Program-made: the position numbers and the translations under genes | Source of the DNA: Squalus acanthias | Lineage: Eukaryota | Direction: 5' to 3' | Length of the DNA: 64,000 nucleotides | Assembly (NCBI GenBank): GCA_030390025.1 | Contig: CM059430.1 | Coordinates: forward strand, 73,284,001-73,348,000 | In this document: positions 12,975-64,000 of the stretch, piece after piece | Position numbering within the stretch: the stretch's first letter is position 1 | Layout of the letters: each line of letters starts with the position of its first letter | The notes under the pieces: generated by a model | What the model saw: only the letters and a program-made list of their open reading frames with translations | Databases searched by the model: none | What the model was told of the DNA's origin: nothing

Positions 12975-13485
12975 GTTTCTATCTGTCTATCTATCATNNN
13001 NNNNNNNNNNNNNNNNNNNNNNNNNNNNNNNNNNNNNNNNNNNNNNNNNNNNNNNNNNNNNNNNNNNNNNNNNNNNNNNNNNNNNNNNNNNNNNNNNNNN
13101 NNNNNNNNNNNNNNNNNNNNNNNNNNNNNNNNNNNNNNNNNNNNNNNNNNNNNNNNNNNNNNNNNNNNNNNNTCTATATAGATGTGACTTATCTACTTAT
13201 GTTTTTACCGTTGTATCATCCATTTTCTCTATATCTATCTTTTTTCAGTCTATATATATATTTATCTCTATATCTATCTATTATTTAACTATTTATAACT
13301 CAGCTATCGGTATGTCTATTTTTCACTCTATCATTCAGTATACTATCTATCTATCATCTATCTATCTTTTATATAGCAACTATCTTCCCCCTATCTATCT
13401 AGATTCAAACATCTCTCCGTCATTTATCTATCTGTCTATCATCTATCATTGCATCTATCATTCTATCATTCATGTATCAACCTAC
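12975..13485. repeat. Degenerate (TCTA)n microsatellite spanning an assembly gap
   Basis: TCTA/TATC units on both sides of the N run. Confidence 0.85.
12998..13172. other. Assembly gap (175 N)
   Basis: Run of n. Confidence 1.
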
Positions 13486-20789: not shown

Positions 20790-22042
20790 CTTTAATGAGT
20801 TATGCTTCCGCCAGGTCCAATCGGGTCCAGACCTCATTGCAGCCTTGGTTAAAACATAGACAAAAGATCTGATTTCCAGATGTGAGGTGATAGTGACTGA
20901 CTTGACAACAAGGGAGCATTTGACCGACAGTGGCATCAAGTAGCCGTAGTAAAACTGAAGTCAATGGGAATCAGGGGGAAAACTCTCCACTGTCTGAAAT
21001 CATACCTAGCACAAAGGAAGATGGTTATATTTGTTGGAGGTCAATCATCTCCGCCCAGGTCATCGCTGCAGGAGTTCCTCTGGACAGTTTCATTTGCCCA
21101 AACATCTTCAGCTACTTTAACAAACGTTCCCTCCATTATAAAGTCAGAAATGCAGATGTGGGCTGATGATTGCAAAGTTTTCAGTTCCATTCGGAACTCC
21201 TCAGATAATGAAGCAGTCCATGCCCAAATGCATCAAGACCTGGAAGACTTTCAGGATTGGGTTGATATGTGGCAAGTAACATTCGCGCCACAAAAGTGCC
21301 AGGCAATGACTATCTCCAACAAGCGAAGGTCTAGCCACCGCCCCTTGACATTCAACGGCATTACCATCAACGAAACCGCCACCATCAACATCCTGGGGTT
21401 CATCAATGACCAGAAACTTTACTGTACCAGCCACTTAAATATTGTGGCTACAAGAGCAGGTCAAAGGCTGGGTATTCTGCGGCGATTGTCTCACATCCTG
21501 ACTCCCCAAAGCCTTTCCACCATCTACAAAGCACAAGTCAGAAGTGTTAAGCATTCTCTCCACTTGTCTGGATGAGTGCAGCTCCAACAACACTCAAGAA
21601 GCTCGACACCATCCAGGACAAAGCATCCCGCTTGAATGGCACTACATCCAACAACTTAAACATTCACTACCTGCAACACTGGTGCACCGTTGCTGCAGTG
21701 TGTACCATCTACAAGATGCACTGCAGCAACTCGACATGGTTTCTTCGGCAGGGGCTCCCAAACCCTCGACCTCAAGCACCTGGAAGGATAAGGACAGCAG
21801 GCGCTGGGAACGCCACCGCCTGCAAGTTGCCCTCCAAATCACACACCATCATTACTTTGAAATATAACGCCATTCCGTCATCGTTGCTGGGTCAAAATCC
21901 AGGAGCTCACACCCTAACAGCACTGTGGGAGTAGAATCACCACACGAACTGCAGCGAATTCAGGTCGCGTCAAAGCACCACCTTCACAAGGGCAATTAGG
22001 AATGGCCAATAAATGTTGTCCTTGCCAGCGATGCCTTCATTC
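20790..22042 (+). mobile_element. LINE family B, 5'-truncated
   Basis: WADDCKVF RT motif, AAPTTLKKLDTIQDKA, family 3' end. Confidence 0.85.
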
Positions 22043-23894: not shown

Positions 23895-26843
23895 ACATAA
23901 GAACATAAGAAATAGGAGCAGGTGTAGGCCATTCGGCCCCTCGAGCCAGCCCTCCATTCAATAAGATCGTGGCTGACGTCTACCTCATCTCCACTTTCCT
24001 GCACTATCCGCATATCTATTCATTCCATTAATATTCAAAAATCTATCGATCTCTGTCTTGAATATTCTCAACGGCTGAGCCGCCACAGCCCTCTGGTGTA
24101 GAGATTTCCAAAGATTCAACTCCCTCTGAGTGAAGAAATTTCTCCTCATCTCAGTCTTTAATGGCCAACTGCTTATTCTCAGACTGTGACCCCTGGTTCT
24201 GGACTCCCCAGCCAGGGGAAACATCCTCCCTGCAGCTACTCTGTCAGACCATGTAAGAATGTTCAATGTTTCAATGAGATTCCCTCTCATTCTGCTAAAC
24301 TCTAGAGAATAAAGGCCTAGTCTGCTCAATGTCTACTCCATAGAACGATATCACATCACAGGAATCAGACTGGTGAATCGTCGTTGCACTACCACTATGA
24401 CAAGTATATCCGTCCTTCGGTAATGAGACCAAAACTGCACAATACTCCAGGTGTGGTCTCACCAGGGCGCTATATAATTGCATTTAGACGTCTTTACTCC
24501 AGTACTCAAATCCTCTTGTAATATAGGCCAACATACCATTTGCTTTCCTAATTGCTTGATGTACCTGCATGTTAACTTTCAGTGATTCGTGTACAAGGAC
24601 ACCTAGATCCCTCTGAGCACCAATATTTCCCATTCTCTCATCATTTAGAAAATATTCTGCTTTTCCATTTTTCCTACCAAAGTGGATAACTTCACATTTC
24701 TCCACGTTATATTCCATTTGCCATGTTTCGGCCCAATCACTTAACTTGGCTATATCCCCATGAAGCCTCCTTGCATCCTCCTCACAACTTACATTCCCAC
24801 CCAGCTTTGTATCATCAGTAAACTTGGATACATCACCTTTGTTCCTCTCATCCAAATCAATGACGAAGGTTGTGAATAGCTGAGCCCCAAAAACTGATCC
24901 TTGCGGTGCCCCACCAGTTACAGGCTGCCAACCCGAAATGGAAATTTTATTTCTACTCTCTGTTTTCAAAACGTTAAACAGTCCTCAAGCCATGCTAGTA
25001 TATTACCCCCAATCCCAAGAGGCCTAATTTTGTTTAATAGCCTCTTGTGTGGAACCTTATGGAATACATTCTGAAAATCCAAATACAACACAACCACTGG
25101 TACCACCTTATCTTTTCTGGTCGTTAAAACCTCAAAAAACTCTAACAGATACGTCAAACATGATTTCCCTTTCATAAATCCGTATTGATTCTGCCCAAAC
25201 CTATTATTTTTTCGAAGTGCCCTGTTACCACATCATTAATAATAAATTCGAGAAATTCCCTACAATTATGTCAGGTTAACTGGTCTGTAGTTCCCTGTTT
25301 TGCCTCTCCCTTCTTTCTTAAATAGTGTAGTTACATGTGCTGCCTTTCAATCCGTGGGAACCGTTCCAGAATCTGTGGTATTTTGGAAAATAACAACCAA
25401 TGCCTTAACTATATCTGTAGCCACCTCTACCAAAACCCTAGGATGCAGGCCATCAAGTCCAGGGGATTTATCGGCTTTCAGTCCCATTACTTTCTCCAGT
25501 ACTATTTTTTTTACCAATATATAATTTCTTTCACTTCATCCTTCTCGCTGAAGCCTTGGTTTTCAACTATTTCCGGGACGTTTTTTGCATCTCCTTCCGT
25601 GAAAACGGACACAAGTCATTTGTTTAATTTCTCTTCCATTTCCTTATTCCCCAATATAATTTCTCCTTTCTTAGCCTGTAAGGGACCCACATTTACTTAC
25701 GCTCATCTTTACCTTTTCATATATCTATAGAAGATTTTACAGTCTGTTTTTATGTCTCTCAGTAGTTTACTCTCATATACTATTTTCCCTTTCTTCATCA
25801 ATTTCTTCATCCTCCTTTGCTGAATTCTAAAATCCCCCCAATCCTCAGGCTTACTACTCTTTTTGGCAACATTACAAGCCTCTTCCTTTGATGTAATTCT
25901 ATCTTTAACTTCTCATGCTGGCCACGGTTGGACCACTTCTCCTGTGGGGTTTTTGTGCTTTAAAGGAAGGCATATTTGTTGTAAATGATGGGTTAATTCT
26001 TTAAATGCTAGCCATTGCTTGGTCTACCATCATACCTTTTCATGTAGTTTCCCAATTTACCATTGACAACTCGCCCCTCATACCTACATAGTTTGCTTTA
26101 TTTAGATTTTAAAGCCTATTTTTTTAGATTTAACTAAATCACTTTCAAACTCAGTATAACATTCTATCATTTTATGGTCACTCTTACCTAAGTGCCCCAT
26201 TAGTACAAGGTTATTAATTGACTATTTCTTATTGCACAATACTACATCTAAAATAATCTGTTCCCTAGTTGGTTCCTCAACATACTGATATAGAAAACTA
26301 TTTGCCATACATTCCATGAGTCAGTCCTCCACAGTTTTACTACAAATTTGGTTTGCCCAGTCTATATGTAGAGTAATGACTCCCATGAACGCTGTATTAC
26401 CCTTGTGACATGCTCCTCGAATTTTCTGATTTATGCTCCACCCTACATTACAACAACTGTTTGGGAGCCTATAAACACGTCGCACCAATGTTTCTTAGCT
26501 CCACCTAAACTGCTACTACTTCTTGATTTTAGGAGATAAGTTCCTTTCTCTCTATTGCATTTATCCCATCCTTTATTATCAAGGCTACCCCTCCTCCTTT
26601 TCCACTTTGCCTATCCCTTTTAAACGTTTAAGTATCCTGGCATATTTATTTCTCCGCGCTGGCCAGTTTGCAACCACGTCTCAATTATGGCTATTAGATG
26701 AAAAATGTTGATTTATATCTGCGCTATTTTTCATCTATTTTGTTGCGAATGCTTCGTGTTCAGATATAGTGCCTTTAGATTTAACTTATCTATTTTCCCT
26801 GATGTCACATTAGTCACTGATGCCTTATTATCTTTGTTACTCT
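23895..26843 (-). mobile_element. CR1 LINE ORF2 (APE endonuclease + RT), degenerate
   Basis: KGKSCLTYLLEFFE, YLDFQNVFHKVPH, SKFTDDTKLGG; (AACATAAG) tail at ~23895. Confidence 0.92.
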
Positions 26844-28333: not shown

Positions 28334-29812
28334 CTTGCGCTTCAGAACTAGCTGCGCCTCTAGCCAGTCTTCTCCAGTACAGCTACAACACTGGCATCTG
28401 TCCGACAATGTGGAAAACTGCGCAGGTATGTCCTGTCCACAAAAATCAGGACAAATCCAATTTGGCCAATTACCGCCACATCAGTCTACTCTCAATCATC
28501 AGTAAAGTGATGGAAGGTGTCATCGACAGTGATATCAAGCGGGACTTACTCACCAACAACCTGCTCACTGATGCCCAGTTTGATCTTCGCCAAGACCACT
28601 CGGCTAACGACCTCATTACAGCTAAATTCCAGCGGTGAGGTGAGAGTGACTACCCTTAACATCAAGGCAGCATTTGACCGAGTGTGGCAAGAAGGAACCC
28701 TAGTAAAGCGGAAGTCAATGGAAATCGGTGGGGAAACTCTCCATTGCTTGGAGTCACACCTAGCACCAATGAAGATGCATGTGCTGATTGAAGGTCAATC
28801 ATCACCAACCCAGGACATTGCTGCAGGAGTTCCTCAGGGCAGTGTCCTAGGCAAAACCATCTTCATCTGCTTTATCAATGAGCTTCCCTTCAAGATAAGG
28901 TCAGAAATGGGGATGTTCGCTGATGACTGCACAGTGTTCAGTGCCATTCACAACTCATCAGATAATGAAGCTGTCCATGCCCGCATGCAATACGACCTGG
29001 ACGTCGTTCAGGCTTGGGCTGATAAGTGGCAGGTAATATTCGCGCCACAGAAGTGCCAGGCAATGATTATCTCCAACAAGCGAGAGTCTAACCACCGCCT
29101 CTTGACATTTAATGGCATTACCATCGCCGAATCTCCCACTATCAACATCGTGGGTGTTACCATTGAACAGAAACTTAACTGGACCAGCCACATAAATACT
29201 GTGGCAGCAAAAGCCGATCAGAGGCTAGGTGTTCTGAGGCGAGTGTCTCACCTCCTGTATCCCCAAATCCTTTCTACTATCTGCAAGGCACAAGTAAGGA
29301 GTGAGATGGAATACTCTCCACATGCCTGGATGAGTGCAGCTCTAACAGCATTCAAGAAGCTCGACACCATCTTGGTCAAAGCAGCCCGATCGTTTGGCAC
29401 CCCATCTACCAGGTTAAAAAATCACTCCCTCCATCACCAGCGTACCGTGGCTACAGTTTGTACCATCTACAGGATGCACTGTAGCAACGCGCCAAGCCTT
29501 CATCGGCAGCACCTCCCAAACACGGGACCTGTTCCACCTAGTAAGACAATTGCAGCTGGCGCATGGGAACACCACCACCTCCAAGTTCCCCTCCAAGTCA
29601 CACACCAGCCTGACTTAGAAGTATATCGCCGAACCTTCATCGTCGCTAGGTCAAAATCCAGGAACTCCTTACCTAACAGCACTGTGGGAGTAACTTCACT
29701 AAGCGGACTGCAGCTGATAAAGAAGGTTGCTCACCACCACCTTCTAAATGGCAATTAGTGATGGGCAATAAATGCTGCCAGCGATGGCCACATCCCATAA
29801 ACGAATAAAAAA
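28334..29812 (+). mobile_element. LINE family B insertion specific to copy A, with a long open RT/C-terminal frame
   Basis: ORF 28517-29758 has IKAAFDRVW, GVPQGSVLG and FADDC. The flanks are contiguous in copy B (~62400-62430). Confidence 0.9.
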
Positions 29813-30089: not shown

Positions 30090-30396
30090 CCAAATTACAG
30101 AAAGTGTAGCTGACATTGGCTGTAGTCTGAAGAGAGACTTGAGATACCTGACAGGTGTATACGGTCCCGCTCTCCACAGGCTATGTCTCATTCAGGTAGC
30201 TAGACGCCTCATACAGTCCCGCAGTGTTCCGCCATTTGATTGGTTCCATCCAGGATCCAATTTCTGATCCATTTTTGTACCATGTGATGTTCAGATCATC
30301 CAGGAAAAAACGCAGCCGTTGCACAAACGAGAATGAGAGGAACCTGTGATCTGCTCTCAGACCGCATGGGGCCCACCTGGAGAGGAGTCGGAGGGA
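30090..30396 (-). pseudogene. Gene A exon 3: disabled C1 domain exon
   Basis: About 92% identical to gene B C1. Acceptor AG>AA (30398-30397), +1 nt in the T run (30305-30310), CAG>TAG (30183-30181), and His of YTCQVSH changed to Gln. Confidence 0.9.
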
Positions 30397-32144
30397 TTGG
30401 AAAAATAAAGGAAGCGTTTGTTTTCAAGTTGTAACTTGGTTTGGCGAATCTGAAGGAAAATCCATCGCTGTAAGTTCGACAAAAGACATTCTAAAATCAC
30501 AATGGTCCTTCAGCCTGACATCATAAACAATATCTTATATGTGCTTTAAAACCCGTAGTACAGGATTCTTAAGAAAGGGAACAAGGAAACAATTCGCACG
30601 GTGTATGTTACATTTTACAAAATTTCTAAGGAAAACAACTTGCATTCATGTATCGCATTTAGCATGACAGAGGAAGAATCAAAGAAAATGTTATTTTCTC
30701 CGCCCCATCGGCCAACTGTCTTCCGTTTTACCTACGAAATAAGTTGATTACATTGTTACAGTTTCTTCCCATTTTGTGCAAACTTTCCCTATACTTGAAG
30801 CACGCATTACCACATTGTTCCACCGTCCAGAGCAGCAGAGGGATGTTTGCTTCTTCAATAAGTTTTCTTTAAGGGAGTGTGATCCATATGGCATCAGGCG
30901 CAGAAAGATCTCTCTCAGAACGCAACATTGAACGAGTACTCAGGCACTAACCCACAATGTTGTAATCTAGATGTTATAAGCTGATCCGAACTTGCACTCA
31001 TTAAAGTAAAACGAACTTAATGTAAATTCGACAAAATTCCAGCGTAAAGCCTGAGTAAATGTAATCACTTCTTATTTCAGTGGGTATTATCCTGGCCTTG
31101 CTTCCGCCAGATGTGGATACAAGCTACAATTCAAAATCTAGACATGCATTTTATGGCAGTGCTGCAGTTCCCGATGGGGTGCTTCATTATATCAGTTCCA
31201 CTCCTTCAAATGAGGCTTCAAACCGAGCCTCTTTCTCCCCTACCCCTTGGTCATTAAAGATCGTACGGTACTATTCGATAGTGAGGATCAAGCTCGCAGT
31301 CGCTACTGACTGCCTTAATCAGATCACCAAACCAGTTTGACTCTTGATGCATCTTCTTGCTGATACTGGGAAAAGCTGTTGGCAAAACAGCCCCGGCATT
31401 CGGCGTTACAGCAATAGAGATTGCCCTCTCCAGTAATTAGTAGTATGCAAAACATTTGGGGCCGCTTGTGAATTTAGGTAAAACGCTATATATGGGAATT
31501 ACATCCGCGTTGTCACACTTATTCTGATTCAGATTAATCCTTGCAAATTAATTGTATAATTCTGGTTCCGAGTCTAAGATAAAGTTGAGCTGACATTACC
31601 CAATATGTAGAACGACTGGTACCCATATCAGAAAATTTTACAAGTGAAATCCGTTGTAAAAGACATGGAGCTGTGTTCTTTTTAAGAAGTGGTTTACAGT
31701 GATTAAAACTTGTCTGGGCTTGTTTGAACTAAGCAAAAAAACACGAACGTCTAATTTAGCAGAATTGTCAACACTTACTTACTTATATAATTGTTTGTTT
31801 GTATTCTTTAATTCCCTTCCTAGTCCAGTAAAAATTGTATTTGATGCACAGAAATTAAAATACCAGGGCACGAAAATGAGCTTTCTGATAATGTTCAGGT
31901 TATTTTGTAAATATATATTTTTTCAATTATTTAATTGTTCAACTTTTATGCCTGAATAATCGTTGAAAAATATGATTTGAAAATTATCCTCGAGCTTATT
32001 TTCAGCGAACCAGTTACATAAAGGGCGAAAGCTTAATCAGAAGTATCAGAAAATCAATAGCATATTTCGAAACTGCATGGCAACAAAGATTGTCTTTAAA
32101 AATAACTGTAAAACTGAAGTAAATCAGGAAACGGTGGTGAAGGG

Positions 32145-33175
32145 GTGTGGGTTGGGGAAACATTCTATTGGCTGGAGTTATGCCTAGCACAATTGAAGTT
32201 GTTTGTGGTTGTTGAAAGTCTATCATCCCAGCCCCAGTATATCGCTGCAGGTGTTCCTCAGGCCAGTGTGCAAGGTCCAACCATCTTCATCTGCCTCATC
32301 AATGACCTTCCCTCCATCGAAGCATCAACAGTTCTGTTTTGATTGCACAGTCTTCAGTTCCATTCACAATTCCTCATATAACGAAGCAATCCGTGCCCGC
32401 ATGCAACAAGACGTGGGCAACATTTAGGTTTGGGCAGATAAGTGGCAAATAACATTCGCACCGCTCAAGTGACAGGCAATGTGCATCTCTAACAAGAGAG
32501 AGCCTAACCATCTGCAATTGACATTCAATGGCATTACCATCGTCGAATAAATCAACATCCCGAGGGTGAATGTTATGAATAGAAACTAAACTGGACTAGC
32601 CACATTAATACTGTGGCTAAAAGGTATGTCAGAGGATAAGTATTCTGCGGAAAAAGACTCGCCTCCTGATCACCGCCCCCCTCCAAATACTTTACAGCAC
32701 CTACAGGGCACAAATTAGGAGTGTGATGGAATACTGTCCACTTGCCTGGATGAGTGCAGCTCCAACAACACTCAAGAAGTGCGACGCCATCCAGGACAAA
32801 GCAGTCCGCTTGAACTGTACCCCATCCGCCATCTTAAACATTCACTCTCTCCACCACTGTCGTACGGTGGCTGCAGTGTGTACCATCTACCAAGTGCACT
32901 GCAGCAACTCTCCAAGTCTTCTCGAGAGCACCTCTCAAACCCACGACTACTACCTCCTTGAATGACAAGAGAAGCAGGCGCATGGGAACACAAACACCTT
33001 CATTTACTCTGCAAGTCACACACCATCCTGACTTGGATATATATCACCGTTCATTCATTGACACTGGGTCAAAATCCAGGAATTCCCTGGCGAACAAAAC
33101 TGTGGCATGACCTGCGCAACATGGACTGCAACGTTTCAAGAAGCTGTCTCACCATCACTTCTCAACGGCAAAAGA
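32145..33175 (+). mobile_element. LINE family B in gene A intron 2; its tail continues at ~34236-34282
   Basis: RT and AAPTTLKK motifs; same insertion site as 59770-60705 in copy B. Confidence 0.85.
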
Positions 33176-33189
33176 GGATGGAAAATACA

Positions 33190-34235
33190 TTTGTGGTGAA
33201 TGACTGTTCTTCGGACTGGAGGGAGGTGTACAGTGGCGTCCCGCAAGGTTCAGGACTAGGACCACTGCTTTGTCATATACATTAATGACTTTGATTTGAG
33301 GGCACATGGCACAATTTCTATATTTGCAGATGACACGAAATTGGAAGTGTGGTAAACAGTGAGGAAGATAACAATAGATTTAAAGACGACATAGCCAGGC
33401 TGGTGCAATAGGAGGACACATTGCAGATGACATTTAACACAGAGAAGTGTGAGGTGATACATTTGGTTGGACGAATGAGGAGAGAATATACATTATAAAT
33501 GGTGCAATTTTAACGGAGGTGCAATAACAGAGACACCTGGGGCTGCTTCTGCACAAATCTTTGAAGGTGGCAGAACAGGTTAACAAAGCAATGAATTGAG
33601 CATATGGGATCCTGGGCTTTATAAACAGAAGAATAGAGTACAAAAGCCAGGAAGTTATGCTAAACCTATATAACACATTAGTTCGGCGCCAGCTGGAGTA
33701 TTGCGTCCAATTCTGGGCACCACACTTTAGGAAGGACGTGATGGCTTTGGAGAGGGTACAGAAGTGATTTGCTAGAATGGTTCCAGGTATGAGGAATAAC
33801 TGTTACGTGGATAGACCAGAGAAGCTGGGGTTGTTCACCTGGGAGCCGAGAAAGCTAAGAGGAGATTTGATAGAAGAGGTTAAAATCATGATGGATTGAG
33901 ATAGAGTAAATAAAGAGAAACTATTTCCAATGGCTGACGAGTCGATATCTAGAGGACACAGTTTTAAGGTGATTGGCAAAATAACCAGAGGCGACATGAG
34001 GAAAACATTTTTTACGCAACGAGTGGTTATGATTTGGAATGCGTTGACTTATAGGGTGGTGGATGCAAATTGAAAAGTAGCATTCAAAAGAGAATTGGAT
34101 AAATATTTGAAGGGGAAAATATGCATGGATATGGGGAAAGAGCAGGGGAGTGGGACTACCTGAATTGCTCTTCGAAAGAGCTGGCGCAGACTCGATGGGC
34201 CGAATGACCTTCTTCTGTGCTGCACCATTTTCTGA
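33190..34235 (+). mobile_element. CR1 3' fragment nested in the family B LINE
   Basis: SGVPQGSGLGP and FADDTKL motifs, CR1 3' UTR; absent from copy B. Confidence 0.85.
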
Positions 34236-34379
34236 AATACTGGAGCTGCCAGCGATGCCCGCATTCAATGAATGAATAAATTGTTCTAAGGCGGCAGAGC
34301 AAATAATAGCTTTGAAATTATACACCATACGTGTTACCAAAGCTGGCGGATTCCGATTATCCCGCTCATTGACACTCAC

Positions 34380-34691
34380 CATATGTAACCAGTTCTGTGC
34401 CGGTTTCGTTTACAACCGCTCTGTGTGTCAATTTGCAGTAATAGAGCTCCGCGTCCTCGGCTCTCACGGCCACCAAGTTAAAGGCTGCTCCTCCCTGGTT
34501 TATAAAATCAAACCGGAATCTGCTGTCTGCACTTTCCTCCAAGAATCCATCGACCCCGTCTCTCCACCAATGCACTTTCACTGGTCTCTTGTCTGAATAG
34601 ATGGGATATATGCAATAAAGATTAACGGCGTCACCTTTCGTCACTGCGGATTTGGGAGCTTGTATTACAGTCGAGGAGGGATTGCCAGCGG
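34380..34691 (-). CDS. Gene A exon 2: intact VJ-type Ig V domain
   Basis: Open frame with intact AG/GT sites; both Cys and the Trp retained. By hand, 25 nt and 17 aa differ from gene B V. The J motif reads NETGTELVT. Confidence 0.88.
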
Positions 34692-34819
34692 CTGTGGAAA
34701 AAGGAGTAAAAGCAAAATGAAAGAGCGAAACACAAAACGAAAATGGGAAGCTGACTAACATTAATGATGTTCGGAAGTACAAAGACACATTGATGATAAA
34801 CTGATAGTAAAAAAGAGCA

Positions 34820-35185
34820 AAATCATGCGGGGTCTGGACAGAGTAGATAGAGAGAAACTGTTCCCATGGCAGAATGGTCGTGAACCAGAGGACACAGATT
34901 TAATGTGATTGACAGAAGAACCAAAAGCGACATGAAGAAAACCTTTTTAAATCAGCGAGTGGTTACGATCTGGAATGCAATGCCTGAAATAGTGGTAAAG
35001 GCAGACTGAATCAATGCTTTCAAAAGGAAGTTGGATAAGTACCTGAAAGAAAAAAAAATGCAGGGCTACAGGAAAGGTCGGGGTTTGGGACTAGCTGAAG
35101 GACTCTTGCAGGGAGCCAACACGGGCTCGACGGGCTCAATGGCCTTCTTCCGTGCTGTAGCCATTCGATGATTCAATGATTGTAT
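34820..35185 (+). mobile_element. CR1 3' fragment in gene A intron 1
   Basis: CR1 3' end with ATTC-type tail; explains intron 1 length of 578 nt versus 211 nt in copy B. Confidence 0.8.
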
Positions 35186-35269
35186 GATAAGACACATACA
35201 GTATATTCATCAATTAAATAAATGAAAGAGCATTCATACTTGGGAAATAGGGCTACAAATTAAATTTAC

Positions 35270-35321
35270 CCGTGCAACTGACCCACAGGGGGACCATGCA
35301 GTGAAACAAAGCTCTCAGCAT
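35270..35321 (-). CDS. Gene A exon 1: signal peptide (MLRALFHCMVPLWVSCT)
   Basis: ATG at 35321 on the minus strand, 52 nt, donor G|GTAAAT. Colinear with gene B exon 1. Confidence 0.8.
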
Positions 35322-41689: not shown

Positions 41690-44600
41690 GAACATAAGAA
41701 CATAAGAAGTAGGAGCAGGAGTAGGCCATATGGCTCCTCAGGCCTGCTCCGCCATTCAATAAGATCATGGCTGATCCGAACCGAGACACACGTCCACTTC
41801 CCTGACCGCTCCCCATAACCCTTAATTCCCTTATCAGCTAGGAAACTGTCTATCTCCGTTTTAAATGTATTTAATGTCGCAGCTTCCACAGCACTCTGAG
41901 GTAGCAAATTCCAAAGATTTACTACCCTCTGAGTGAAGAAGTTTCTCCTCATCTCAGTTTTGAAACGGCAGCCCTTATTCTAAGATTATGCTCCTAGTTC
42001 TAGTCTCACCCATCAGTGGAAACATCCTCCCCGCCTCCACCCGATCAAGCCCACTCACAATCTTATATGTTTCGATAAGATCGCCTCTCATTCTTCTGAA
42101 TTCTTATGAGTAGAGGCCCCACCAACTCAACCTTTCCTCATAAGTCAACCCCCTCATCTCCGGAATCAACCGAGTGAATCTTATCTGAACTGCCTCGAGA
42201 GCAAGTATATATTTTCTTAAACATGGAAATCAAAACTGCATGCAGTATTCCAGTTGTGGCCTCACCAGTACCCTGTAAAACTGAAGCAAGACCTCCATGC
42301 TTTTATACTCCATCCCCCTTGCAATAAAAGCCAAGATTCCATTGGTCTTCATGATCACCTGCTGTACCTGCATACTAACCTTCTGTGTTTCATGCAACAG
42401 GACCCCCAGATCCCTTTGTACTGTAGCACTTTGCAGTTTCTTTCCATTTAGATAATAACTTGCTCTTTGATTGTTTCTGCCAAAGTGCATAACCTCACAC
42501 TTTCCAACATTATATTCCATCTGCCAAATTTCCTCCCACCCACTTAGCCTCTCTATGTCCTTTTGCAGGTTTTTTATGTCCTCCTCACTCACTGCTTTTC
42601 CTCCCATCTTTGTATCGTCAGCAAACTTGGATACGTTACACTTGGTCCCCTCCTCCAAATCTTTAATATAGATTGTAAAGAGTAGGTGTCCCAGCACTGA
42701 CCCTTGCGGAACACCACTAGTTACTGATTGCCAACCCGAGAATGAACCATTTATCCCAACTTTATGTTTTCTGTTAGATAGCCAATCTTCCACACATGCC
42801 AGTATATTACATCCAATCTCGTGATTTTTTTATCTTGTGCAGTAATCTTTTGTGTGGCACCTTATCAAATGACTTTTGGAAGTCCAAATACACCACATGC
42901 ACTCGTTCCCCTTTATCCACCCTGTGTGTTACGTCCTCAAAAAATTCGAGCAATTTTGTCAAGCATGATTTCCCCTTCATAAAACCATGCTGACTCTGTC
43001 CGATTAAATTATGCTTATCCAAATGTCCTGTTACTGCTTCCTTAATAATTGACTCCAACATTTTACCAACCACAGATGTTAGGCTAACTGGTCGATAGTT
43101 TCCAGCCATTTGTTTACATCCCTTTTTCAATAAGGGCGTTGCATTAGCAGTTTTCCAATCTGCTGGGACAGTTACCGAATCCAGGGAGTTTTGAAAAATT
43201 ACCATCAACGCATCCGCAATCGCTGCCGCTGCTTCTCCCAAGACCCTAGGATGTAAGCCATCAGGTCCAGGGGATTTATCCGCCTTAAGTCCCATTAACT
43301 TACCGAGTACCTTCTCCTAAGTGATTTTAATCGTGTTTAGCTCCTCCCCCCCTATAGCCCCCCGTTTGTCCAGTGTTGGGATATTTTTAGTATCCTCTTC
43401 TGTAAAGACTGATACAAAATATTTGTTCAGCGTATTTGCCATCTCCGTGTTCCCCACTACTAATTTCCCGGTCTCCTCCTCTAAGGGACCAACATTCACT
43501 ATAGCCACCCTTTTTCTTTTTATATAACTGTAGAAACTCTTGCAATCTGTTTTTAAATTTTTTGCTAGTTTACTTTCATAATCTATCTTCCCCTTCTTAA
43601 TTCATCTTTTAGTTATTATTTTCTGGCTTTTAAATGTTTCCAATCGTCTATCCTCACACTAGATTTGGCTACTTTATAGGCCCTTGTTTTCAGTCGGATA
43701 CTATCCTTTATTACTTTACTTAACCACGGATCGCTTTCTTTTCTTTTACGCCCCTTTTTCCTCAGTGGAATATATTTATCTTGGAAGTTGTGAAATACCT
43801 CCTTGAATGTACACCACTGCTCCTGTACCGTCTTAAACCTTAATCTATTTTCCCAGTCCAGTTTAGTCAACTCTGCTCTCATACCTTCATATCTCCTTTA
43901 TTTAAGCTTAGTACGCTGGTTTGAGATCCAACTCTCTCACCCTCCAACTGAATTTGGAATTCAACCATGTTATCGTCACTCATTACAAGGGGATCCTTTA
44001 CTAGGACATATTTTATTAATCCTGTCTCATTACACAGGACCAGATCTAAGATTGCCTGCCCCCTGTTTGGTTCAGTAACATACTGCTCAAGGAACCCGTC
44101 CCTAATGCACTCTATGAACACTTCCTCAATGCTGCCTGCCCAATTTGATTTGTCCAGTCAATTTGAAAGTTAAAATCTCCCATGATTATAGCTGTTCCCT
44201 TATTACAAGCCCCAACTATTTCCTGATTTATACTCCGACCAATAGAGTTACAACTGTTAGGAAGCCTATAGACTACGCCCACTAGTGGCTTTATCCCCTT
44301 ATTATTCCTTATCTCCACCCAAACTGTTTCACTATCCTGAACGTTTGACCCAATATCATTTCTCACTATTGCAGTGATTCCATCCTTTATTAACATAGCC
44401 ACCCCACCTCCCTTTCCTTCCAGTCTGTACTTCCTAATCGTCAAATACCCCTGGATGTTTAGTTCCCAGTCATAGTCACCTCGCAGCCATATTTCTGTAA
44501 TGTCCACCAGATCATACCCATGTGTAGTTATTTGTAGGGTCAACTCGTCTATTTTGTTACGAATGCTGCGTGCATTCAGATAAATAACTTTTAAACATGT

Positions 44601-58859: not shown

Positions 58860-58960
58860 CAGCAGATGTGCAAATAACAAACAGGAAGTTATATTTTCAG
58901 CTGCTATCGTGCACATTGTGGGTGGTTCAAGTTACAGTTTATAGTCAAAGCGCAGATAGA
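58860..58960 (+). promoter_or_regulatory. Candidate proximal promoter motifs of gene B (E-boxes, ETS site)
   Basis: CAGATG 58863, ACAGGAAGT 58881 and CAGCTG 58898, about 200 nt upstream of the ATG. Motif match only. Confidence 0.3.
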
Positions 58961-59089
58961 AATCTCACATATCAGCAAAACCTACATCCTGACACGCCTA
59001 CGTGAAACTAAATCTCCTCGTGACATTCGACTCCGATTCTTCATTCATTACCATTTAATTTAATGACCGTTTCAATTTAACTATTCAAG

Positions 59090-59141
59090 ATGCTGAGGGT
59101 GTTGCTTCGCTGTGTGGTCCTCCTGCGGATCAGTTGCACAG
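59090..59141 (+). CDS. Gene B exon 1: signal peptide (MLRVLLRCVVLLRISCT) of an L-VJ-C1 IgSF gene
   Basis: ATG at 59090, 17 mostly hydrophobic codons + 1 nt, then donor G|GTAAAT (phase 1). A homologous exon is present in copy A. Confidence 0.85.
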
Positions 59142-59352
59142 GTAAATTTATTTTCTAGCCTTCGTCCGTAAGTATGGACACAGTTTCATTTCATTAATTG
59201 ATGAATATAACTTAAGGCTCTCATTTTGTACTTTTTTTTCACCTTTTATTTCCAGTGTGTATTCGTACTTCCGAAATTCTTTAATGTTAATCAGCTCTCC
59301 GATTTCATTATCTGTTTCGGTCTTTAATTTTGATTTTACTCCTTTTCGACAG

Positions 59353-59664
59353 CCGCTGGCAATCCCTCGTCGACTGTAATACAAGTTCCCAAGTCCGCAG
59401 TGACGAGAGGTGCCGAGGTTACTCTTTATTGCATATATCCCATCTTTTCAGACAAGAAACCAGTGAAAGTGCATTGGTGGAGAGACGGGGCCGATGGATT
59501 CTTGGAGGAAAGCGCAGACAGCAGATTCCAGTTTTATTTCCTAAACCAGGGAGGAGCAGCCTTTAAACTGGTGGCCGTGAGAGCCGAGGACGCAGGGCTC
59601 TATTACTGCAGATTGACACACAGTGCGGTTGTAAACGGAACCGGCACAGAACTGGTTGTATATG
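59353..59664 (+). CDS. Gene B exon 2: germline-joined VJ-type Ig V-set domain, NKp30/NCR3-like
   Basis: Acceptor ttttcgacAG, donor G|GTGAGT, 312 nt, phase 1/1. Shows B-strand Cys (VTLYC), C-strand Trp (VHWWRDG), the D-x-x-x-Y-Y-C motif (EDAGLYYC) and a J-like G strand (NGTGTELVV). Confidence 0.93.
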
Positions 59665-59769
59665 GTGAGTGTCAATGAGCGGGATAATCGGAATCCGCCA
59701 GCAGCGGTAACACATGGTTTATAATTTCAAAGCTATTATTTGCTCTGCCGCCTTAGAAGAAAATGATTA

Positions 59770-60705
59770 ATTTATTCATTCACTGGATGTCGGCGTCGCT
59801 GGCTAGTCCAGCATTTATTGCTCATCCCCAGATGCCGTTGAGAAGTGACGGCGAGCAGCTTTCTTGAACCGTTGCTGTCCGTGTGGTGAAGGAAATGTCA
59901 AAGCTCTGCTAGGTAAGGAGTTCCTGGATTTTGACTCAGCGACGATGCAGGAACGGCGGTATATTTCCAAGTCAGAATAGTGTGTGACTTGGACGGGAAC
60001 TTGGAGGTGGTGGTGTTCCCATGCGCCTACTGCTCTTGTCCTTCTAGGTGGTAGAGGTCACGGGTTTGCGAGGTGCTGTCGACGAAGCCTTGACGAGTTG
60101 CTGCATTGCATTTTGTAGATGGTACACCCTGCAGCCACTGTGCGACGGTCGTGGAGAGAGTGAATGTTTAAGCTGGTGAATGGGGTGCCGATCAAACAGT
60201 CTGAATTATCCTGGATGGGGTCGCTGGCAAATTGAGAGTATTCAATCTGACTCCTGACTTCTGCCCTGTAGGTAGTGCAAAGGATTTGGGGTTAAGCAGC
60301 TGGGTCACTCGCCGTAGAATACATATTCTCTGATTTAAATTGTAGCCACAGTATTAATGTGGCTGGTCCAGTTAAGTTTCTGGTCAATGATGACCCCCAG
60401 GATGTTGATGGTGGGGGGTTCGATGACGGTAATGTCATTGAATGTCAAGTGTAGATGTTTAGCCTCTCTCTTGTTAGAGATAGCCATTTCCTGGCATTTG
60501 TGTGGCGCGACTGTTACTTGCCAATTATCAGCCAAGCCTAGATGTTGCTCATGTCTTGTTGCACGAGGGCACTGATTACTTCATCAACTGAAGAATGGCG
60601 AATGGAACTGAATAGTGCACAATCATCAGCGAACTTCTGATCTTTTGATGGAGGGAACTTCATTGATGAAGCAGCTGTAGAAGGTTGGGCCGAGGACACT
60701 GCCCT
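59770..60705 (-). mobile_element. LINE family B in gene B intron 2
   Basis: ADNWQVTVAPHKCQ motif and family 3' end, adjacent to the V-exon flank. Confidence 0.85.
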
Positions 60706-61831
60706 ATTTCTTATTTTTTTATGTTAACTTGCATCTCTGAAGCGTTTTGCCTGATCTCTGAAGCGGTCGCAAAATATTTCGCATACATCTAATTATTGGA
60801 GAGTGTAGTCTCTATTGCTGTACCGCCGAACGCCGGGGTTGGTTTGCCAACAGCAAGTTCCCAGTATCAGCAAGCATCTCTAACAAGAGTCAAACTAGTT
60901 TGGTTGTCTGACTGAGGTAGTCAGTATCGGCTGCGAGCTTCATCCTCACAATAGAATAGGGCCATACGATCTTTAATGGCCTTCGCGTAGGGGAGAAAGA
61001 GGCTCGATTTGAAGCCTCAGTTGAAAGCGTGCAACTCTTATAATGTAGCAACCCATCGGTAGCTGCAGCATTGCCATATAACGTGTGTCTAGATTTTGGA
61101 TCGTAGCTTAAATCCACATCTGGCTAAAGCAAGGCCAGGATACTACCCACTGAACCAAGAAGTCCTTACATTCACTCAGACTTTACGCTGGAATTTTGTC
61201 TAATTTTTATTAAGTTCTTTTTACTTTAATGAGACGGAGTTTGGCTCAGTTTATAAAATCTAGCTTATTAAATTGTGGGTTAGAGCTCCAGTACTGGGTC
61301 AATATTGCGTTGAAGAAGATCTTTCTGTGTCTGAAGCTATATGGATTCCAGTCACTTAATGAAAACGTAATGATGGACCATATAAATCTCTGTTGCTCTG
61401 GACGGTACAATGATGAGGTAATGCATGATTTCAGTATTGGGAAAGTTTGCTCAAAATTGTAAGCAGCTGTAAAAACGTAATCAATTTATTTCTTAGATAA
61501 AACGAAGGCAGTTGGCCGATGGGGCAGATAAAATAAAATTTTCTTTGATTCTTCCTCTGTCATGCTAAATGCGCTACATGAATGCAAGTTGTTTACCTTC
61601 GAAGTTTAGTAAAATGTAACATATACCGTGGGAATTGTTTCCTTGCTCCATTTCTTAAGAATCCTGTACTACGGGCTTTGAAAGCATGTATAAGATATCG
61701 GTTATGATGTCAGGCTGATTGGCCATTTTGGTTTTAGAAAGTCTTTTTTCGGAGTTACAGCTATGGCATTTCCTTCAGATTCGCCAAACCAAGTCACAAC
61801 TTGAAAACAAATGCTTGCTTTATTTTTCCAG

Positions 61832-62137
61832 ACCCTCCGACTCCTCTCCAGGTGAACCGCATGCAGTCTGAGAGCAGATCACCGGGTCCTCTGATTCTCG
61901 TTTGTACAACGGCTGCGTTTTTCCCGGATGATCTGAACATCACATGGTACAAAAATGGATCAGAAATTGGATCGGGGATGGAATCAATCAAATGGCGGAA
62001 CCTTGCGGGACTGTATGAGGCGTCTAGCTACCTGAATGAGACACAGCCTGTGGAGAGCGGGACGGTATACACCTGTCAGGTATCTCACATCTCTCTCCGG
62101 ACTTCAGCCAATGTCAGCTACACTTTCTGTCATTTGG
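61832..62137 (+). CDS. Gene B exon 3: Ig C1-set domain
   Basis: Acceptor tttattttttccAG, donor G|GTAAGA, 306 nt, in phase with the V exon. C1 motifs LVC..AAFFP..LNITWYKNG and YTCQVSH. Confidence 0.92.
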
Positions 62138-62827
62138 GTAAGATCAATATATGAGTTGCCCGTTTATATTAACCAATTGAAAACATGATTTTCGTGTGTA
62201 ATAGAGATGAACTGAAACATCGAATTTGTGTCTTCTGTTTGGCACATGTTTGGCCCGTCACATTGTCTGCATCACACCTAGGGGTTGTAATAGTACACAT
62301 GCTTATGGTTGTATATGTTTGATGTCATTTAATAAGAACATGAGAAATACGTACAGGAGTAGGCCATACGGCTCCTCGAGTCTTCTCCACCATTCAGTAA
62401 GTTCATGTATGATCTTCTACCTCAACATACTCACCCGGCCTATCCCCATATCCCTTGTTTATCATAAAATAGTAACTGTGGAAATATAGCTTTGGTCAAG
62501 TGGGAATAAAAATGTTTAATAACTAATTGTAACATTCATAATCCGCGGTCGGCAAACAGTTGATGTTTAACCGGCAGTTACAAATTGTTAAAAAATATAT
62601 TTTAGTGATGCTACAGTGTTTCCAGTATTCTCATAATTTCATGATGCAAATAGTTTCTAAAGTAAAAAAGTCATCATAGGTTACGGAAATAAATCTCAAA
62701 TCAATACGACGGATTTTGTTGTAGAAATAACGCTGAGGCTGACATTGCTCACCATTATTTACGGAGAAATAGGATAGCAACTTCTTGTGATTGCACATGC
62801 ACATTTCAACGCAGAAGTCCTTGTTTG

Positions 62828-63272
62828 CCGTGGCTCCATCGGTCGCACTTTAGCCTCTGAATCAGAAGGTTCTGCATTTAACGTCCACTTCAGAGACTCC
62901 AGTACAAAAATCTAGGCTGACACTGCAGTGCAGTAGTGAGGGGATGCAGCACTGTCAGAGGTGCTGTCTTTCGGATTAGACAATAAATCGAGGCACTTTG
63001 TGTTGCCTCAGGTGGACGTAAAAGATCCTATGGCACTGTATCGCAAAAGAGCAGCGGAGTTATCCCTGGTATCCTGACCAAAATGGATCCCTTAATCAAC
63101 ACCACTAAAAGAAAGAAATGTCTGGTAATTATCACATTGCTTTTTGAGGGAGCTTGCTGTACAAATTGGATGTTGTGGTTACTACATTACAAAAGTAATG
63201 ACACTTCAAAAGTACTTAATAGGTTGTAAAGTGCTTTGGGGCTTCCTGCGGTTGCTATATAATGCAAATTTT
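62828..63272 (+). mobile_element. tRNA-headed Deu-domain SINE (SacSINE1/AmnSINE1-like)
   Basis: tRNA-like head, core GCTGACACTGCAGTGCAGTAGTGAGGGATGCAGCACTGTCAGAGGTGCTGTCTTTCGG, L2-like tail. Family recognised from memory. Confidence 0.75.
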
Positions 63273-64000
63273 AATTCAGCAATCGGGAAGTTGCTGTCCA
63301 ATATGCGATGTTCTGCCAAAAGGTTCCCGAAAGAACATCTCGCTGTTTGGCTCCCCATTCAAATATATTTAATAGCTTGAAGTTGCTGTACTTACATCAT
63401 ATATACGAACTGAACTTGCCAGAAAACATTAGGGCTTGTCTATTCCAGTTTAAGTCCACTTTTAACAGCGTGTAAGTATTAATTGCCACCAAACACACTG
63501 ACACTGAAATGAAATTTTGCAAGTGTGGAGTCTCATTCCTTCAGACTTTAATTAGTGATTTAAAAATAGGTGAATTAAAAGTAATCGCTTTCTTCACTTT
63601 TTCTTGCTGTCTCTTTTATTTCTCTTCCTTGATCTAATCTTTCTTTCTCTCTCTTCATTTCGCATTCTGTACCTGATCTTGACATTGGATTCAATATTCT
63701 AACTGTATCAGACTCTGCGCTGCTCATTAACGATTATTAAACCCGATTACTTAAGGCAATTCAGAGAATGCTGCGCTTTTTTCCTCTCTAATTTAAAGTG
63801 AATTTCTCGGCCGTTCTAGTGCCACTGAGAGCAAAATCCGGCCCATGTTCAAATATATCCGGAAAATGTCGCTTGTTTGTTTCAAACGCCTGAGAAAGGT
63901 CAAAGCTTTGACCATAGCTTCCCTAGACTACACGTCACATCATTTGAAGAGAGATGCACAAATTAGTAGAATTAACAATTCCTAAAATGTCCAGTATCGC

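What the first reader, a model, noticed from the sequence alone, without database searches (positions are those of the whole stretch)
59090..62137. Intact non-rearranging leader-VJ-C1 gene: antigen-receptor architecture without V(D)J segments
Seen: three phase-1 exons splice in frame into a signal peptide, a V domain whose G strand is already a J-like GxGTxLxV (NGTGTELVV), and a true C1-set domain. Known: C1 domains are largely confined to Ig, TCR, MHC/B2M, tapasin, SIRP and some B7/nectin relatives. Joined VJ domains typify NKp30 (NCR3), and VJ-C1 genes (PRARP/VJC1 type) are proposed relics of the pre-RAG antigen receptor. The V lacks Ig light-chain hallmarks (no WYQQ, no FGxG) and resembles NKp30 (W.RD; G.GT.LVV). 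Inference: this is a member of a little-characterised chondrichthyan receptor family between NK receptors and Ig/TCR.
Basis: partly seen in the sequence, partly recalled or inferred. Interest (0 to 1): 0.88.

Follow-up and report, generated by a model that had tools for sequence, protein, structure and literature searches.

The report
Shark VJ-C1 inhibitory receptor gene fragment
These three exons are the intact front half of a shark cell-surface receptor whose outer part is built like an antibody or T-cell-receptor chain that needs no gene rearrangement; it belongs to a large, unnamed family found across sharks, rays and chimaeras.

Summary
There are three GT-AG, phase-1 exons: leader 59090-59141, V with a J-like G strand 59353-59664, and C1-set 61832-62137.

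The gene is not complete in the window. Exon 3 ends in a splice donor. The closest relatives continue with a transmembrane segment and a tyrosine-motif (ITIM-type) tail. No such exon lies in the last 1.9 kb.

The V exon is 80% identical to a Heptranchias perlo RefSeq model and 76% to a Heterodontus one. All 20 nearest single-V proteins I looked up, and 36 of 42 profile hits, are cartilaginous fish. Automatic names disagree: SIRP-alpha-like, tapasin-related-like, Ig-lambda-like and NCR3LG1-like.

Against solved structures the orthologue is about equally far from SIRP, B7-H6, IgM and Ig light chains, at 45-53 bits. A special NKp30 affinity is not supported.

An inverted copy at 35321-30090 is a decaying pseudogene.

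Splicing could not be shown: the only contig on the gene is unspliced at the exon 2 acceptor.

This scan had already noted the same kind of gene many times elsewhere in this genome (114 notes).

I found no paper on this family, in a limited open-access library.

The parts
59090..59141 (+). Exon 1: the start codon and most of the signal peptide (a split leader). It holds 17 codons plus 1 base and ends at a GT donor.
   Evidence: The leader is near-identical to that of H. perlo P0001.
59142..59352 (+). Intron 1 (GT..AG, 211 nt).
   Evidence: An unspliced 254-nt contig of run X1 covers 59299-59550.
59353..59664 (+). Exon 2: the end of the leader plus a V domain with a built-in J-like G strand (NGTGTELVV). 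Phase 1 in and out.
59665..61831 (+). Intron 2 (GT..AG, 2167 nt). It holds a dispersed repeat at about 59771-60705.
   Evidence: The repeat has several copies in the window and very deep contigs in all four runs.
61832..62137 (+). Exon 3: a short PPTPL linker plus a C1-set Ig domain. It ends in phase 1 at the donor TGG|GTAAGA.
62138..64000 (+). The start of intron 3, or the 3' flank. No transmembrane or tail exon is recognisable here, and it is partly high-copy repeat.
35270..35321 (-). Paralogue A, leader exon. ATG and GT donor are kept.
34380..34691 (-). Paralogue A, V exon. The frame is open, but conserved family residues have been changed.
30090..30396 (-). Paralogue A, C1 exon remnant. 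The acceptor reads AA instead of AG (30398-30397), there is one extra base in the T/C run at 30310-30302, and there is a TAG at 30183-30181.

Best explanation
Bases 59090-62137 are the first three exons of a functional member of a family of non-rearranging receptors found across cartilaginous fish. The family layout is split leader, one VJ-type V domain, a short proline linker, one C1-set domain, a transmembrane helix and a cytoplasmic tail with ITIM-type tyrosine motifs.

Shown here:
- the exon structure and the identity of both domains;
- orthology to H. perlo XP_067853506.1 and its Heterodontus, Mobula, Leucoraja and Callorhinchus relatives;
- more conservative change in this copy than in its pseudogene twin.

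Inferred:
- The missing 3' exons lie beyond the window.
- The protein sits on the cell surface and binds an unknown ligand with its germline-encoded V domain. Because the V is well conserved between distant sharks, that ligand is probably itself conserved.
- After tyrosine phosphorylation the tail recruits SH2 phosphatases and dampens activation of the cell, as SIRP-alpha and other ITIM receptors do.
- A cysteine just before the membrane (TFCHL) may allow a disulphide-linked dimer.
For: - Canonical splice sites and open phase-1 exons.
- Pfam V-set and C1-set above their cut-offs.
- Confident fold models.
- The V exon is 79.6% identical to P0001, 75.7% to P0152, 65% to P0154 (skate), 55% to Mobula and 48% to Callorhinchus. 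The C1 exon is 72%, 63%, 63%, 59% and 62.5% identical to the same set.
- In the V tree the window copies are sister to each other (SH-aLRT 95), then join H. perlo (88), then Heterodontus and Mobula (87).
- The orthologues P0001, P0152 and P0153 each have a TM helix and one canonical ITIM plus further tyrosines. Of 86 family rows, 60 have a TM, and 34 of those 60 have at least one canonical ITIM.
- Family-invariant residues (Trp, Asp, the Cys pairs, the His of YTCxVSH) are all present in the window exons.
- Of 14 polarisable differences between copy B and pseudogene A, only 4 fell on B.
Against: - No transcript evidence. One run held the V exon, and its single 254-nt contig (depth 2.9) runs 54 nt into intron 1, so it is unspliced or genomic. 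Nothing lay on exons 1 or 3.
- The TM and tail exons were not found in the 1863 bases after exon 3. The copy could therefore be truncated.
- Reading through the exon 3 donor reaches a stop after 5 codons, so a secreted form is possible.
- Phosphatase recruitment and ligand binding are inferred from motif patterns only.
- The RefSeq relatives are predicted models, not cloned cDNAs.
Confidence: 0.65

Rival explanations
1. Copy B is itself a dead or truncated duplicate, or it encodes only a secreted V-C1 protein. On this reading the TM and tail exons were lost in the inverted duplication, and the three intact exons are either still decaying or are used with read-through of the exon 3 donor.
For: - No TM or tail exon in 62138-64000, nor downstream of paralogue A on the minus strand.
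- Homology between the two copies stops at 62581/28174.
- Read-through gives GKINI and then a stop, and an AATAAA lies at 62505-62510.
- Some database relatives end right after C1 without a TM: P0010, P0022 and P0154.
- No spliced RNA was seen.
Against: - All three exons and all five splice sites are intact, while the twin copy of the same age has three disabling changes in its C1 exon.
- B carries only 4 of 14 polarised V changes, and none is at a family-conserved residue.
- 1.9 kb is short for a shark intron; intron 2 alone is 2.2 kb.
Confidence: 0.15
2. The family is not a kind of its own. It is the cartilaginous-fish branch of an already described non-rearranging VJ-C1 family: either SIRP (signal-regulatory proteins) or PRARP (Fu et al. 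2019, chicken).
For: - SIRP-gamma is the best solved match of orthologue P0001 (53.4 bits), and SIRP-alpha scores 49.4.
- The family profile aligns in one stretch over V plus C1 of SIRP-alpha 2wng (110.6 bits).
- NCBI names many members SIRP-alpha-like.
- The layout V-C1-TM-ITIM resembles SIRP-alpha minus one C1.
- From recall only, not from any call: the spacing of paired tyrosine motifs in family tails resembles the SIRP-alpha tail, and PRARPs are VJ-C-TM proteins with ITIMs that occur as linked pairs.
Against: - IgM (52.1), B7-H6 (51.3) and Ig light chains (about 45) score almost the same as SIRP, so there is no firm nesting.
- SIRPs have two C1 domains; this family has one. One model (P0090) has two, but they are near-identical recent repeats.
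- The profile search found no tetrapod or teleost SIRP or PRARP. The best non-chondrichthyan hit scored 76 bits, against at least 158 bits for members.
- The tail-only search found only Callorhinchus kin.
- Both of those searches are word-limited, so this evidence is weak.
Confidence: 0.15
3. It is a germline-joined Ig light-chain gene, or a recent derivative of one.
For: - The C1 exon's best single-domain match in the PDB is a lambda constant domain (32 bits).
- Several relatives are auto-named Ig lambda-1-like.
- Unchecked first-stage notes place similar genes inside Ig light-chain cluster arrays.
Against: - The V exon lacks the light-chain WYQQ and FGxG signatures: it reads WWRDG and NGTGT.
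- Orthologues carry a TM and ITIM tails.
- The family is old and conserved from chimaera to sharks, with its own subfamilies.
- No Ig V, J or C segment lies in the window.
Confidence: 0.03

Closest known systems
SIRP family (SIRP-alpha/beta/gamma; PDB 2wng, 4i2x)
   Same: Both have a germline V with a J-like G strand followed by C1-set domain(s), a type I membrane protein layout and, in SIRP-alpha, ITIM tyrosines. SIRP is the best solved sequence match of the orthologue, and the profile aligns contiguously over V plus C1.
   Different: This family has one C1 domain, not two. The margin over IgM, B7-H6 and IgL is only a few bits. No SIRP from bony vertebrates was recovered by the family profile. 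The ligand (CD47 for SIRP) is unknown here.
[quoted passage not shown] 2019, J Immunol; seen only as a citation in PMC10751288)
   Same: A non-rearranging VJ exon in a membrane receptor, discussed as a relic of the antigen-receptor precursor (passages of PMC10751288).
   Different: PRARP was described in chicken. Its further distribution and domain details come from my recall only. I had no sequence and no text, so nothing could be compared.
UrIg and UrIg2 (Flajnik et al. 2023, 2025; PDB 9dmx)
   Same: All are cartilaginous-fish genes with a split leader, a single-exon VJ and C1-type domains (sections 4, 6 and 7 of PMC12227049). UrIg2 is the second-best profile match (130.7 bits over four domains).
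   Different: UrIg has three C domains and is secreted. UrIg2 has 9-11 C domains. Both are single genes, and the paper never mentions ITIM (0 occurrences). The present family has one C1 and ITIM tails, and many paralogues were retrieved per species, 10 from Heterodontus francisci alone.
NKp30 / NCR3
   Same: A germline VJ-type domain with G.GT.L.V. NKp30 is among the ten best structural matches of the V model.
   Different: From my own knowledge, NKp30 has no C1 domain and signals through a charged TM residue. Its structural score ties with CD79b, VHH, TCR-delta V and V-lambda, and it is not among the 60 best sequence matches.
Ig light chains, including germline-joined shark clusters
   Same: The leader-VJ-C1 exon plan and phases are the same, and the C1 is closest to a lambda constant domain by sequence.
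   Different: There are no WYQQ or FGxG signatures. Relatives have a TM and tail. No recombination signal pair is present: only a lone CACAGTG at 59619-59625 with no nonamer by eye.
Teleost NITRs and other paired Ig-like receptor families (KIR, LILR, CD300)
   Same: All are multigene families of germline receptors with ITIM-bearing long-tail forms and short-tail forms that have a charged TM residue. Both forms occur in this family.
   Different: From my own knowledge, the membrane-proximal domain of those families is I- or C2-type, not C1. The one teleost hit examined (P0191) lacks both the J motif and the C1 signature.

Membership tests
Chondrichthyan VJ-C1-TM-ITIM family (unnamed; RefSeq '-like' models) | V domain with the family signature (WW[KR]xG ... 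DxGxYxC ... NGTGxxLxV). | tested here: met
   One search set against the alignments. The invariant W, D and C, and the near-invariant G, Y, G and G, are all present. E 6.9e-50 to P0001.
Chondrichthyan VJ-C1-TM-ITIM family (unnamed; RefSeq '-like' models) | PPTPL linker plus a C1-set domain with FxP..LxxxWYKNG ... GLYExSS ... YTCxVSH. | tested here: met
   72% identity to P0152.
Chondrichthyan VJ-C1-TM-ITIM family (unnamed; RefSeq '-like' models) | Transmembrane helix and a tail with tyrosine motifs. | tested here: inconclusive
   Not found in 62138-64000. The window ends 1863 bases after exon 3, and exon 3 ends in a donor.
SIRP | V domain followed by two C1-set domains. | tested here: not met
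   Orthologues go from the single C1 straight to the TM.
SIRP | Sequence nesting inside SIRP rather than beside other V-C1 proteins. | tested here: inconclusive
   SIRP-gamma 53.4, IgM 52.1, B7-H6 51.3, SIRP-alpha 49.4 and IgL about 45 bits. No tree with named references could be built.
SIRP | Binds CD47 or surfactant proteins. | not testable with these tools
   Needs a binding assay.
NKp30 / NCR3 | A single V domain with no C domain, and an activating TM. | tested here: not met
   A C1 exon follows the V exon. The definition of the family comes from my own knowledge.
Ig light chain (germline-joined) | FR2 WYQQ-type and J FGxGTxLxV signatures, and a secreted V-C chain without a TM. | tested here: not met
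   The V exon reads WWRDG and NGTGTELVV. Orthologues have a TM and tail.
UrIg / UrIg2 | VJ followed by three or more C1-type domains; a single-copy gene. | tested here: not met
   This family has one C1 and many paralogues. The definition comes from PMC12227049 sections 4 and 7.
PRARP | Orthology to the chicken PRARP genes. | not testable with these tools
   The paper is not held, and no PRARP sequence was returned by any search.

The most novel reading that the evidence does not exclude
This family may be a surviving membrane-bound form of the two-domain VJ-C1 gene that Flajnik and colleagues place at the root of UrIg, Ig and TCR (Fig. 2 legend of PMC12227049). On this reading it is kept in all cartilaginous fish as an expanded set of inhibitory and short-tail receptors. 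If the unchecked first-stage notes are right, some members sit physically among Ig light-chain clusters. That would give a living model of what the antigen-receptor precursor did before the RAG transposon arrived: germline-encoded recognition coupled to ITIM signalling.
Probability: 0.1. Interest if true: 0.85.

Novelty: new variant of a known kind. Interest (0 to 1): 0.5.

Why it matters
Non-rearranging VJ-C1 genes are sought as relics of the gene that the RAG transposon split to create antibodies and T-cell receptors. So far UrIg, UrIg2, NKp30, SIRP and PRARP fill that role.

A conserved, many-membered VJ-C1-TM-ITIM family across sharks, rays and chimaeras appears in databases only under contradictory automatic names. 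It would add a membrane-bound, signalling representative in the oldest jawed vertebrates.

It would also make several questions testable:
- which V and C1 lineages are oldest;
- whether such genes are linked to the MHC, the antigen-receptor complex or the light-chain clusters;
- what a germline VJ domain recognises.

For this window alone the yield is modest: one more, incomplete, member and its dead twin.

Tried and rejected
**Transcript evidence.** It shows neither expression nor silence.

**3' exons.** I ran tblastn with six family tails at E up to 50 and a three-frame reading of 62138-64000. Nothing was credible. One hydrophobic stretch at 63574-63699 is pyrimidine-rich low complexity and does not fit the family TM.

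**Relatives outside cartilaginous fish.**
- The profile search gave six weak, unrelated IgSF hits.
- The tail-only search gave only Callorhinchus.
- ESM Atlas gave generic V-set or V-C1 clusters such as 'putative antigen receptor', B7/butyrophilin-like, CD200-like and SIRP fragments.
- None of these resolves ancestry. The two homology searches see only proteins that share exact 5-residue words.

**Synteny.** Earlier notes on MHC genes are all on other pieces of the genome. Table S1 of PMC12227049 gives scaffold coordinates of the antigen-receptor complex and may bear on linkage, but supplements are closed and I did not ask for them.

**Literature.** Nine searches found no paper on this family. 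Three papers are not held: Fu 2019, Ohta 2019 and the 2023 UrIg paper. They could contain it, so 'not in print' is not established.

**Rejected readings.**
- NKp30-specific kinship.
- Paralogue A as a working V-only gene.
- The CACAGTG at 59619-59625 as a recombination signal. There is no nonamer by eye, the twin copy reads CACAGAG, and there are 15 such heptamers in the window against 8.4 expected.
Full report
**What is there**

The window sequence at 59090-62137 holds three exons with canonical GT-AG borders, all in phase 1.

- Exon 1 (59090-59141) starts with ATG and encodes a hydrophobic leader, MLRVLLRCVVLLRISCT, plus one base.
- Exon 2 (59353-59664, 312 nt) is open for 103 codons.
- Exon 3 (61832-62137, 306 nt) is open for 101 codons and ends at the donor TGG|GTAAGA.

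The two split codons read Ala and Asp. Every search used one exon at a time, or natural full-length relatives returned by the tools.

**Domain identity**

- Pfam puts exon 2 above threshold for V-set (32.4 bits), Ig_3 and Ig_2, and below threshold for I-set.
- Pfam puts exon 3 clearly in C1-set (52.5 bits against a cut-off of 21).
- The G strand of the V reads NGTGTELVV. That is the J pattern xGxGTxLxV with Asn in place of the Phe or Trp of Ig and TCR J segments.
- AlphaFold models built on family alignments are confident: pLDDT 90.2 for V and 92.7 for C1.
- The C1 model's 50 best listed Foldseek matches are all MHC class II beta chains, matching over about 95 columns at TM about 0.8 by the query's length; I take the matched part to be their C1-type beta2 domain.
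- By sequence the C1's best single-domain match is a lambda constant domain at 32 bits. UrIg2, IgM, SIRP-gamma and MHC I alpha3 follow.
- The V model matches CD79b, camelid VHH, TCR-delta V, NKp30, V-lambda and shark VNAR at indistinguishable E-values of 1-4e-7.
- In the model the C' strand is only a single bridge residue, and no C'' strand was called.

**The gene is incomplete in the window**

Exon 3 ends in a donor. The nearest relatives continue with a transmembrane helix and a tail of 74-117 residues that carries tyrosines.

Neither tblastn with six family tails nor a three-frame reading finds such exons in the remaining 1863 bases. Much of that stretch is high-copy repeat.

If the donor were ignored, the frame would stop after five more codons. 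An AATAAA lies at 62505-62510. A secreted V-C1 form therefore cannot be excluded.

**The family**

A full phmmer scan of 1.84 billion representative proteins with the V exon gave 309 hits at E up to 1e-3.

- The best is P0001 (E 6.9e-50, 80% identity). This is XP_067853506.1 of the sevengill shark Heptranchias perlo, 368 residues.
- I read all 53 single-V hits that I fetched. Nearly all share the WW[KR]xG and (N)G[TS]G..L.V signatures, and those that include the C1 region also share the PPTPL linker and YTCxVSH.
- All 20 that I looked up by name are cartilaginous fish: eight shark genera, four ray genera and the chimaera Callorhinchus.
- All 15 hits of a search with P0001 are cartilaginous fish.
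- So are 36 of 42 hits of a search with a 25-sequence profile. There the weakest member scores 158 bits and the best outsider 76 bits.
- These two searches reach only proteins that share exact words, so absence elsewhere is not proven.
- NCBI's automatic names for members are contradictory: SIRP-alpha-like, tapasin-related-like, Ig lambda-1-like, NCR3 ligand 1-like, CD276 homolog, HLA-DO-beta-like and uncharacterized.

Of 86 family rows (isoforms included, four non-family rows dropped), 60 have a predicted TM helix. Of those 60, 34 carry at least one canonical ITIM. Other forms also occur:
- short tails with an acidic residue at the end of the helix (...IIVDH...);
- a cysteine-rich CCKxC juxtamembrane type without tyrosines;
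- V-TM forms without C1;
- one model with two near-identical C1 domains.

**Orthology**

| Relative | V exon identity | C1 exon identity |
|---|---|---|
| Heptranchias P0001 | 79.6% | 63% |
| Heterodontus P0152 | 75.7% | 72% |
| skate Leucoraja P0154 | 65% | 63% |
| Mobula P0153 | 55% | 59% |
| Callorhinchus P0006 | 48% | 62.5% |

In a quick maximum-likelihood tree of 78 V segments, the two window copies are sisters (SH-aLRT 95). They then join Heptranchias (88), and then Heterodontus and Mobula (87). Seven larger starred clades (96-100) stand beside them, and among the rows whose species I know, four of these hold both sharks and rays. The tree has few columns and no outgroup, so deep order is not resolved.

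This lineage is therefore an old, fairly conserved one, not a fast-evolving species-specific expansion.

**The twin copy**

An inverted paralogue lies at 35321-30090 on the minus strand.

- Its leader exon keeps the ATG and the donor.
- Its V exon is open.
- Its C1 exon has an AA in place of the acceptor AG, one extra base and an in-frame TAG.
- The V exons differ at 25 of 309 bases, with dN/dS 0.84.
- Of 14 amino-acid differences that two outgroups can polarise, 10 fell on the twin. They include DAG to DAE and NGTG to NETG at near-invariant family positions. Only 4 fell on the gene under study, and none of those is at a conserved position.
- The twin is thus decaying as a whole, and the gene under study has been kept.

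**Relation to known families**

Against all PDB sequences the orthologue P0001 scores as follows:

| PDB protein | Bits |
|---|---|
| SIRP-gamma | 53.4 |
| IgM | 52.1 |
| B7-H6 | 51.3 |
| SIRP-alpha | 49.4 |
| Ig light chains | about 45 |

The family profile ranks a lambda-containing chain, UrIg2 (130.7 bits over four domains) and SIRP-alpha (110.6 bits over three domains, with one contiguous V-plus-C1 stretch) near the top. This near-tie explains the contradictory automatic names. The family does not nest firmly in any solved family.

- SIRP is marginally the nearest and has the most similar design, but it has two C1 domains.
- UrIg and UrIg2 share the split leader and the single-exon VJ. However, they have 3 to 11 C domains, are single genes, and are described without any ITIM (PMC12227049, sections 4, 6 and 7 plus term search).
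- PRARP is known to me here only as a citation in PMC10751288 (passages).

**Expression**

Laid on 58900-64000, it gave one 254-nt contig at depth 2.9 covering 59299-59550. That contig includes 54 bases of intron 1, so it is genomic or unspliced. Nothing lay on exons 1 or 3. All other depth sat on repeats. This neither supports nor refutes transcription.

Indirect support comes from the RefSeq models of other species, which are continuous across the same two junctions.

**Context**

- The rest of the window is mostly repeats and open frames that look like reverse transcriptase by eye. I did not search them.
- There is no other Ig-like exon in the window.
- Unchecked first-stage notes report another VJ-C1 gene with a tyrosine tail about 33 kb upstream.
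- 114 notes elsewhere in this genome hold all the words 'VJ C1 receptor'; the 8 shown describe such genes, some placed inside light-chain arrays.

**Verdict**

It is the 5' part of a member of an unnamed, chondrichthyan-wide VJ-C1-TM-ITIM receptor family. Most likely it is an inhibitory surface receptor for a conserved ligand.

The NKp30 emphasis and the word 'intact gene' are not.

The family is publicly predicted. As far as nine searches of an open-access library show, it is undescribed. Three key subscription papers could not be read.

Noticed in passing
window 30090-35321 (minus strand): An inverted paralogue of the gene. The leader and V exons are open. The C1 exon is disabled three ways: acceptor AA at 30398-30397, one extra base in 30310-30302, and a TAG at 30183-30181. 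Its V carries 10 of the 14 polarised changes, including two Gly-to-Glu changes at near-invariant positions. It therefore looks like a whole-gene pseudogene rather than a V-only gene.
   Followed up: yes
window 59619-59625: An exact CACAGTG heptamer sits in the CDR3-coding part of the V exon, 10 bases after the conserved Cys codon. That is roughly where a rearranging V segment carries its recombination-signal heptamer. There is no nonamer at 12 or 23 bases by eye, and the twin copy reads CACAGAG. The window holds 15 such heptamers against 8.4 expected, so this is probably chance.
   Followed up: partly
window 62125-62137 and 30102-30090: Both window copies have a cysteine at the very end of the C1 exon (TFCHL and TFCNL). 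The orthologues have Tyr or Asn there (TFYSL, TFYIL, TFNKL). It may be a lineage-specific interchain disulphide site.
   Followed up: no
window 62138-62154 and 62505-62510: Without splicing at the exon 3 donor, the frame ends after GKINI. An AATAAA follows about 350 bases later. A secreted V-C1 isoform is conceivable, and some database relatives end right after C1.
   Followed up: partly
window 59771-60705 (intron 2), 62833-63174, 63517-63687: These are dispersed repeats. The intron 2 element has at least four further copies in the window (near 29.8-28.8, 22.0-21.1, 8.5-7.5 and 33.2-32.3 kb). All three stretches show contig depths in the hundreds to tens of thousands in all four runs.
   Followed up: partly
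window 28517-29758 (+), 42230-43295 (-), 44112-44543 (-), 20964-21575 (+), 24484-24969 (-): Long open frames that look like reverse-transcriptase and endonuclease parts of LINE elements by eye (motifs such as FADDT/FADDC). I did not search them against any library.
   Followed up: no
family proteins (P0031, P0089, P0116, P0158, P0015; P0037, P0175-P0180): Besides the ITIM forms, the family has two other designs. One has a short tail with an acidic residue at the inner end of the TM helix (IIVDH, IIVEH). The other is a tyrosine-free type with a WWIY...CCKxC juxtamembrane. These point to paired or alternative signalling designs within one family.
   Followed up: partly
window 12998-13172: A run of 175 N. 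I left it untouched.
   Followed up: no
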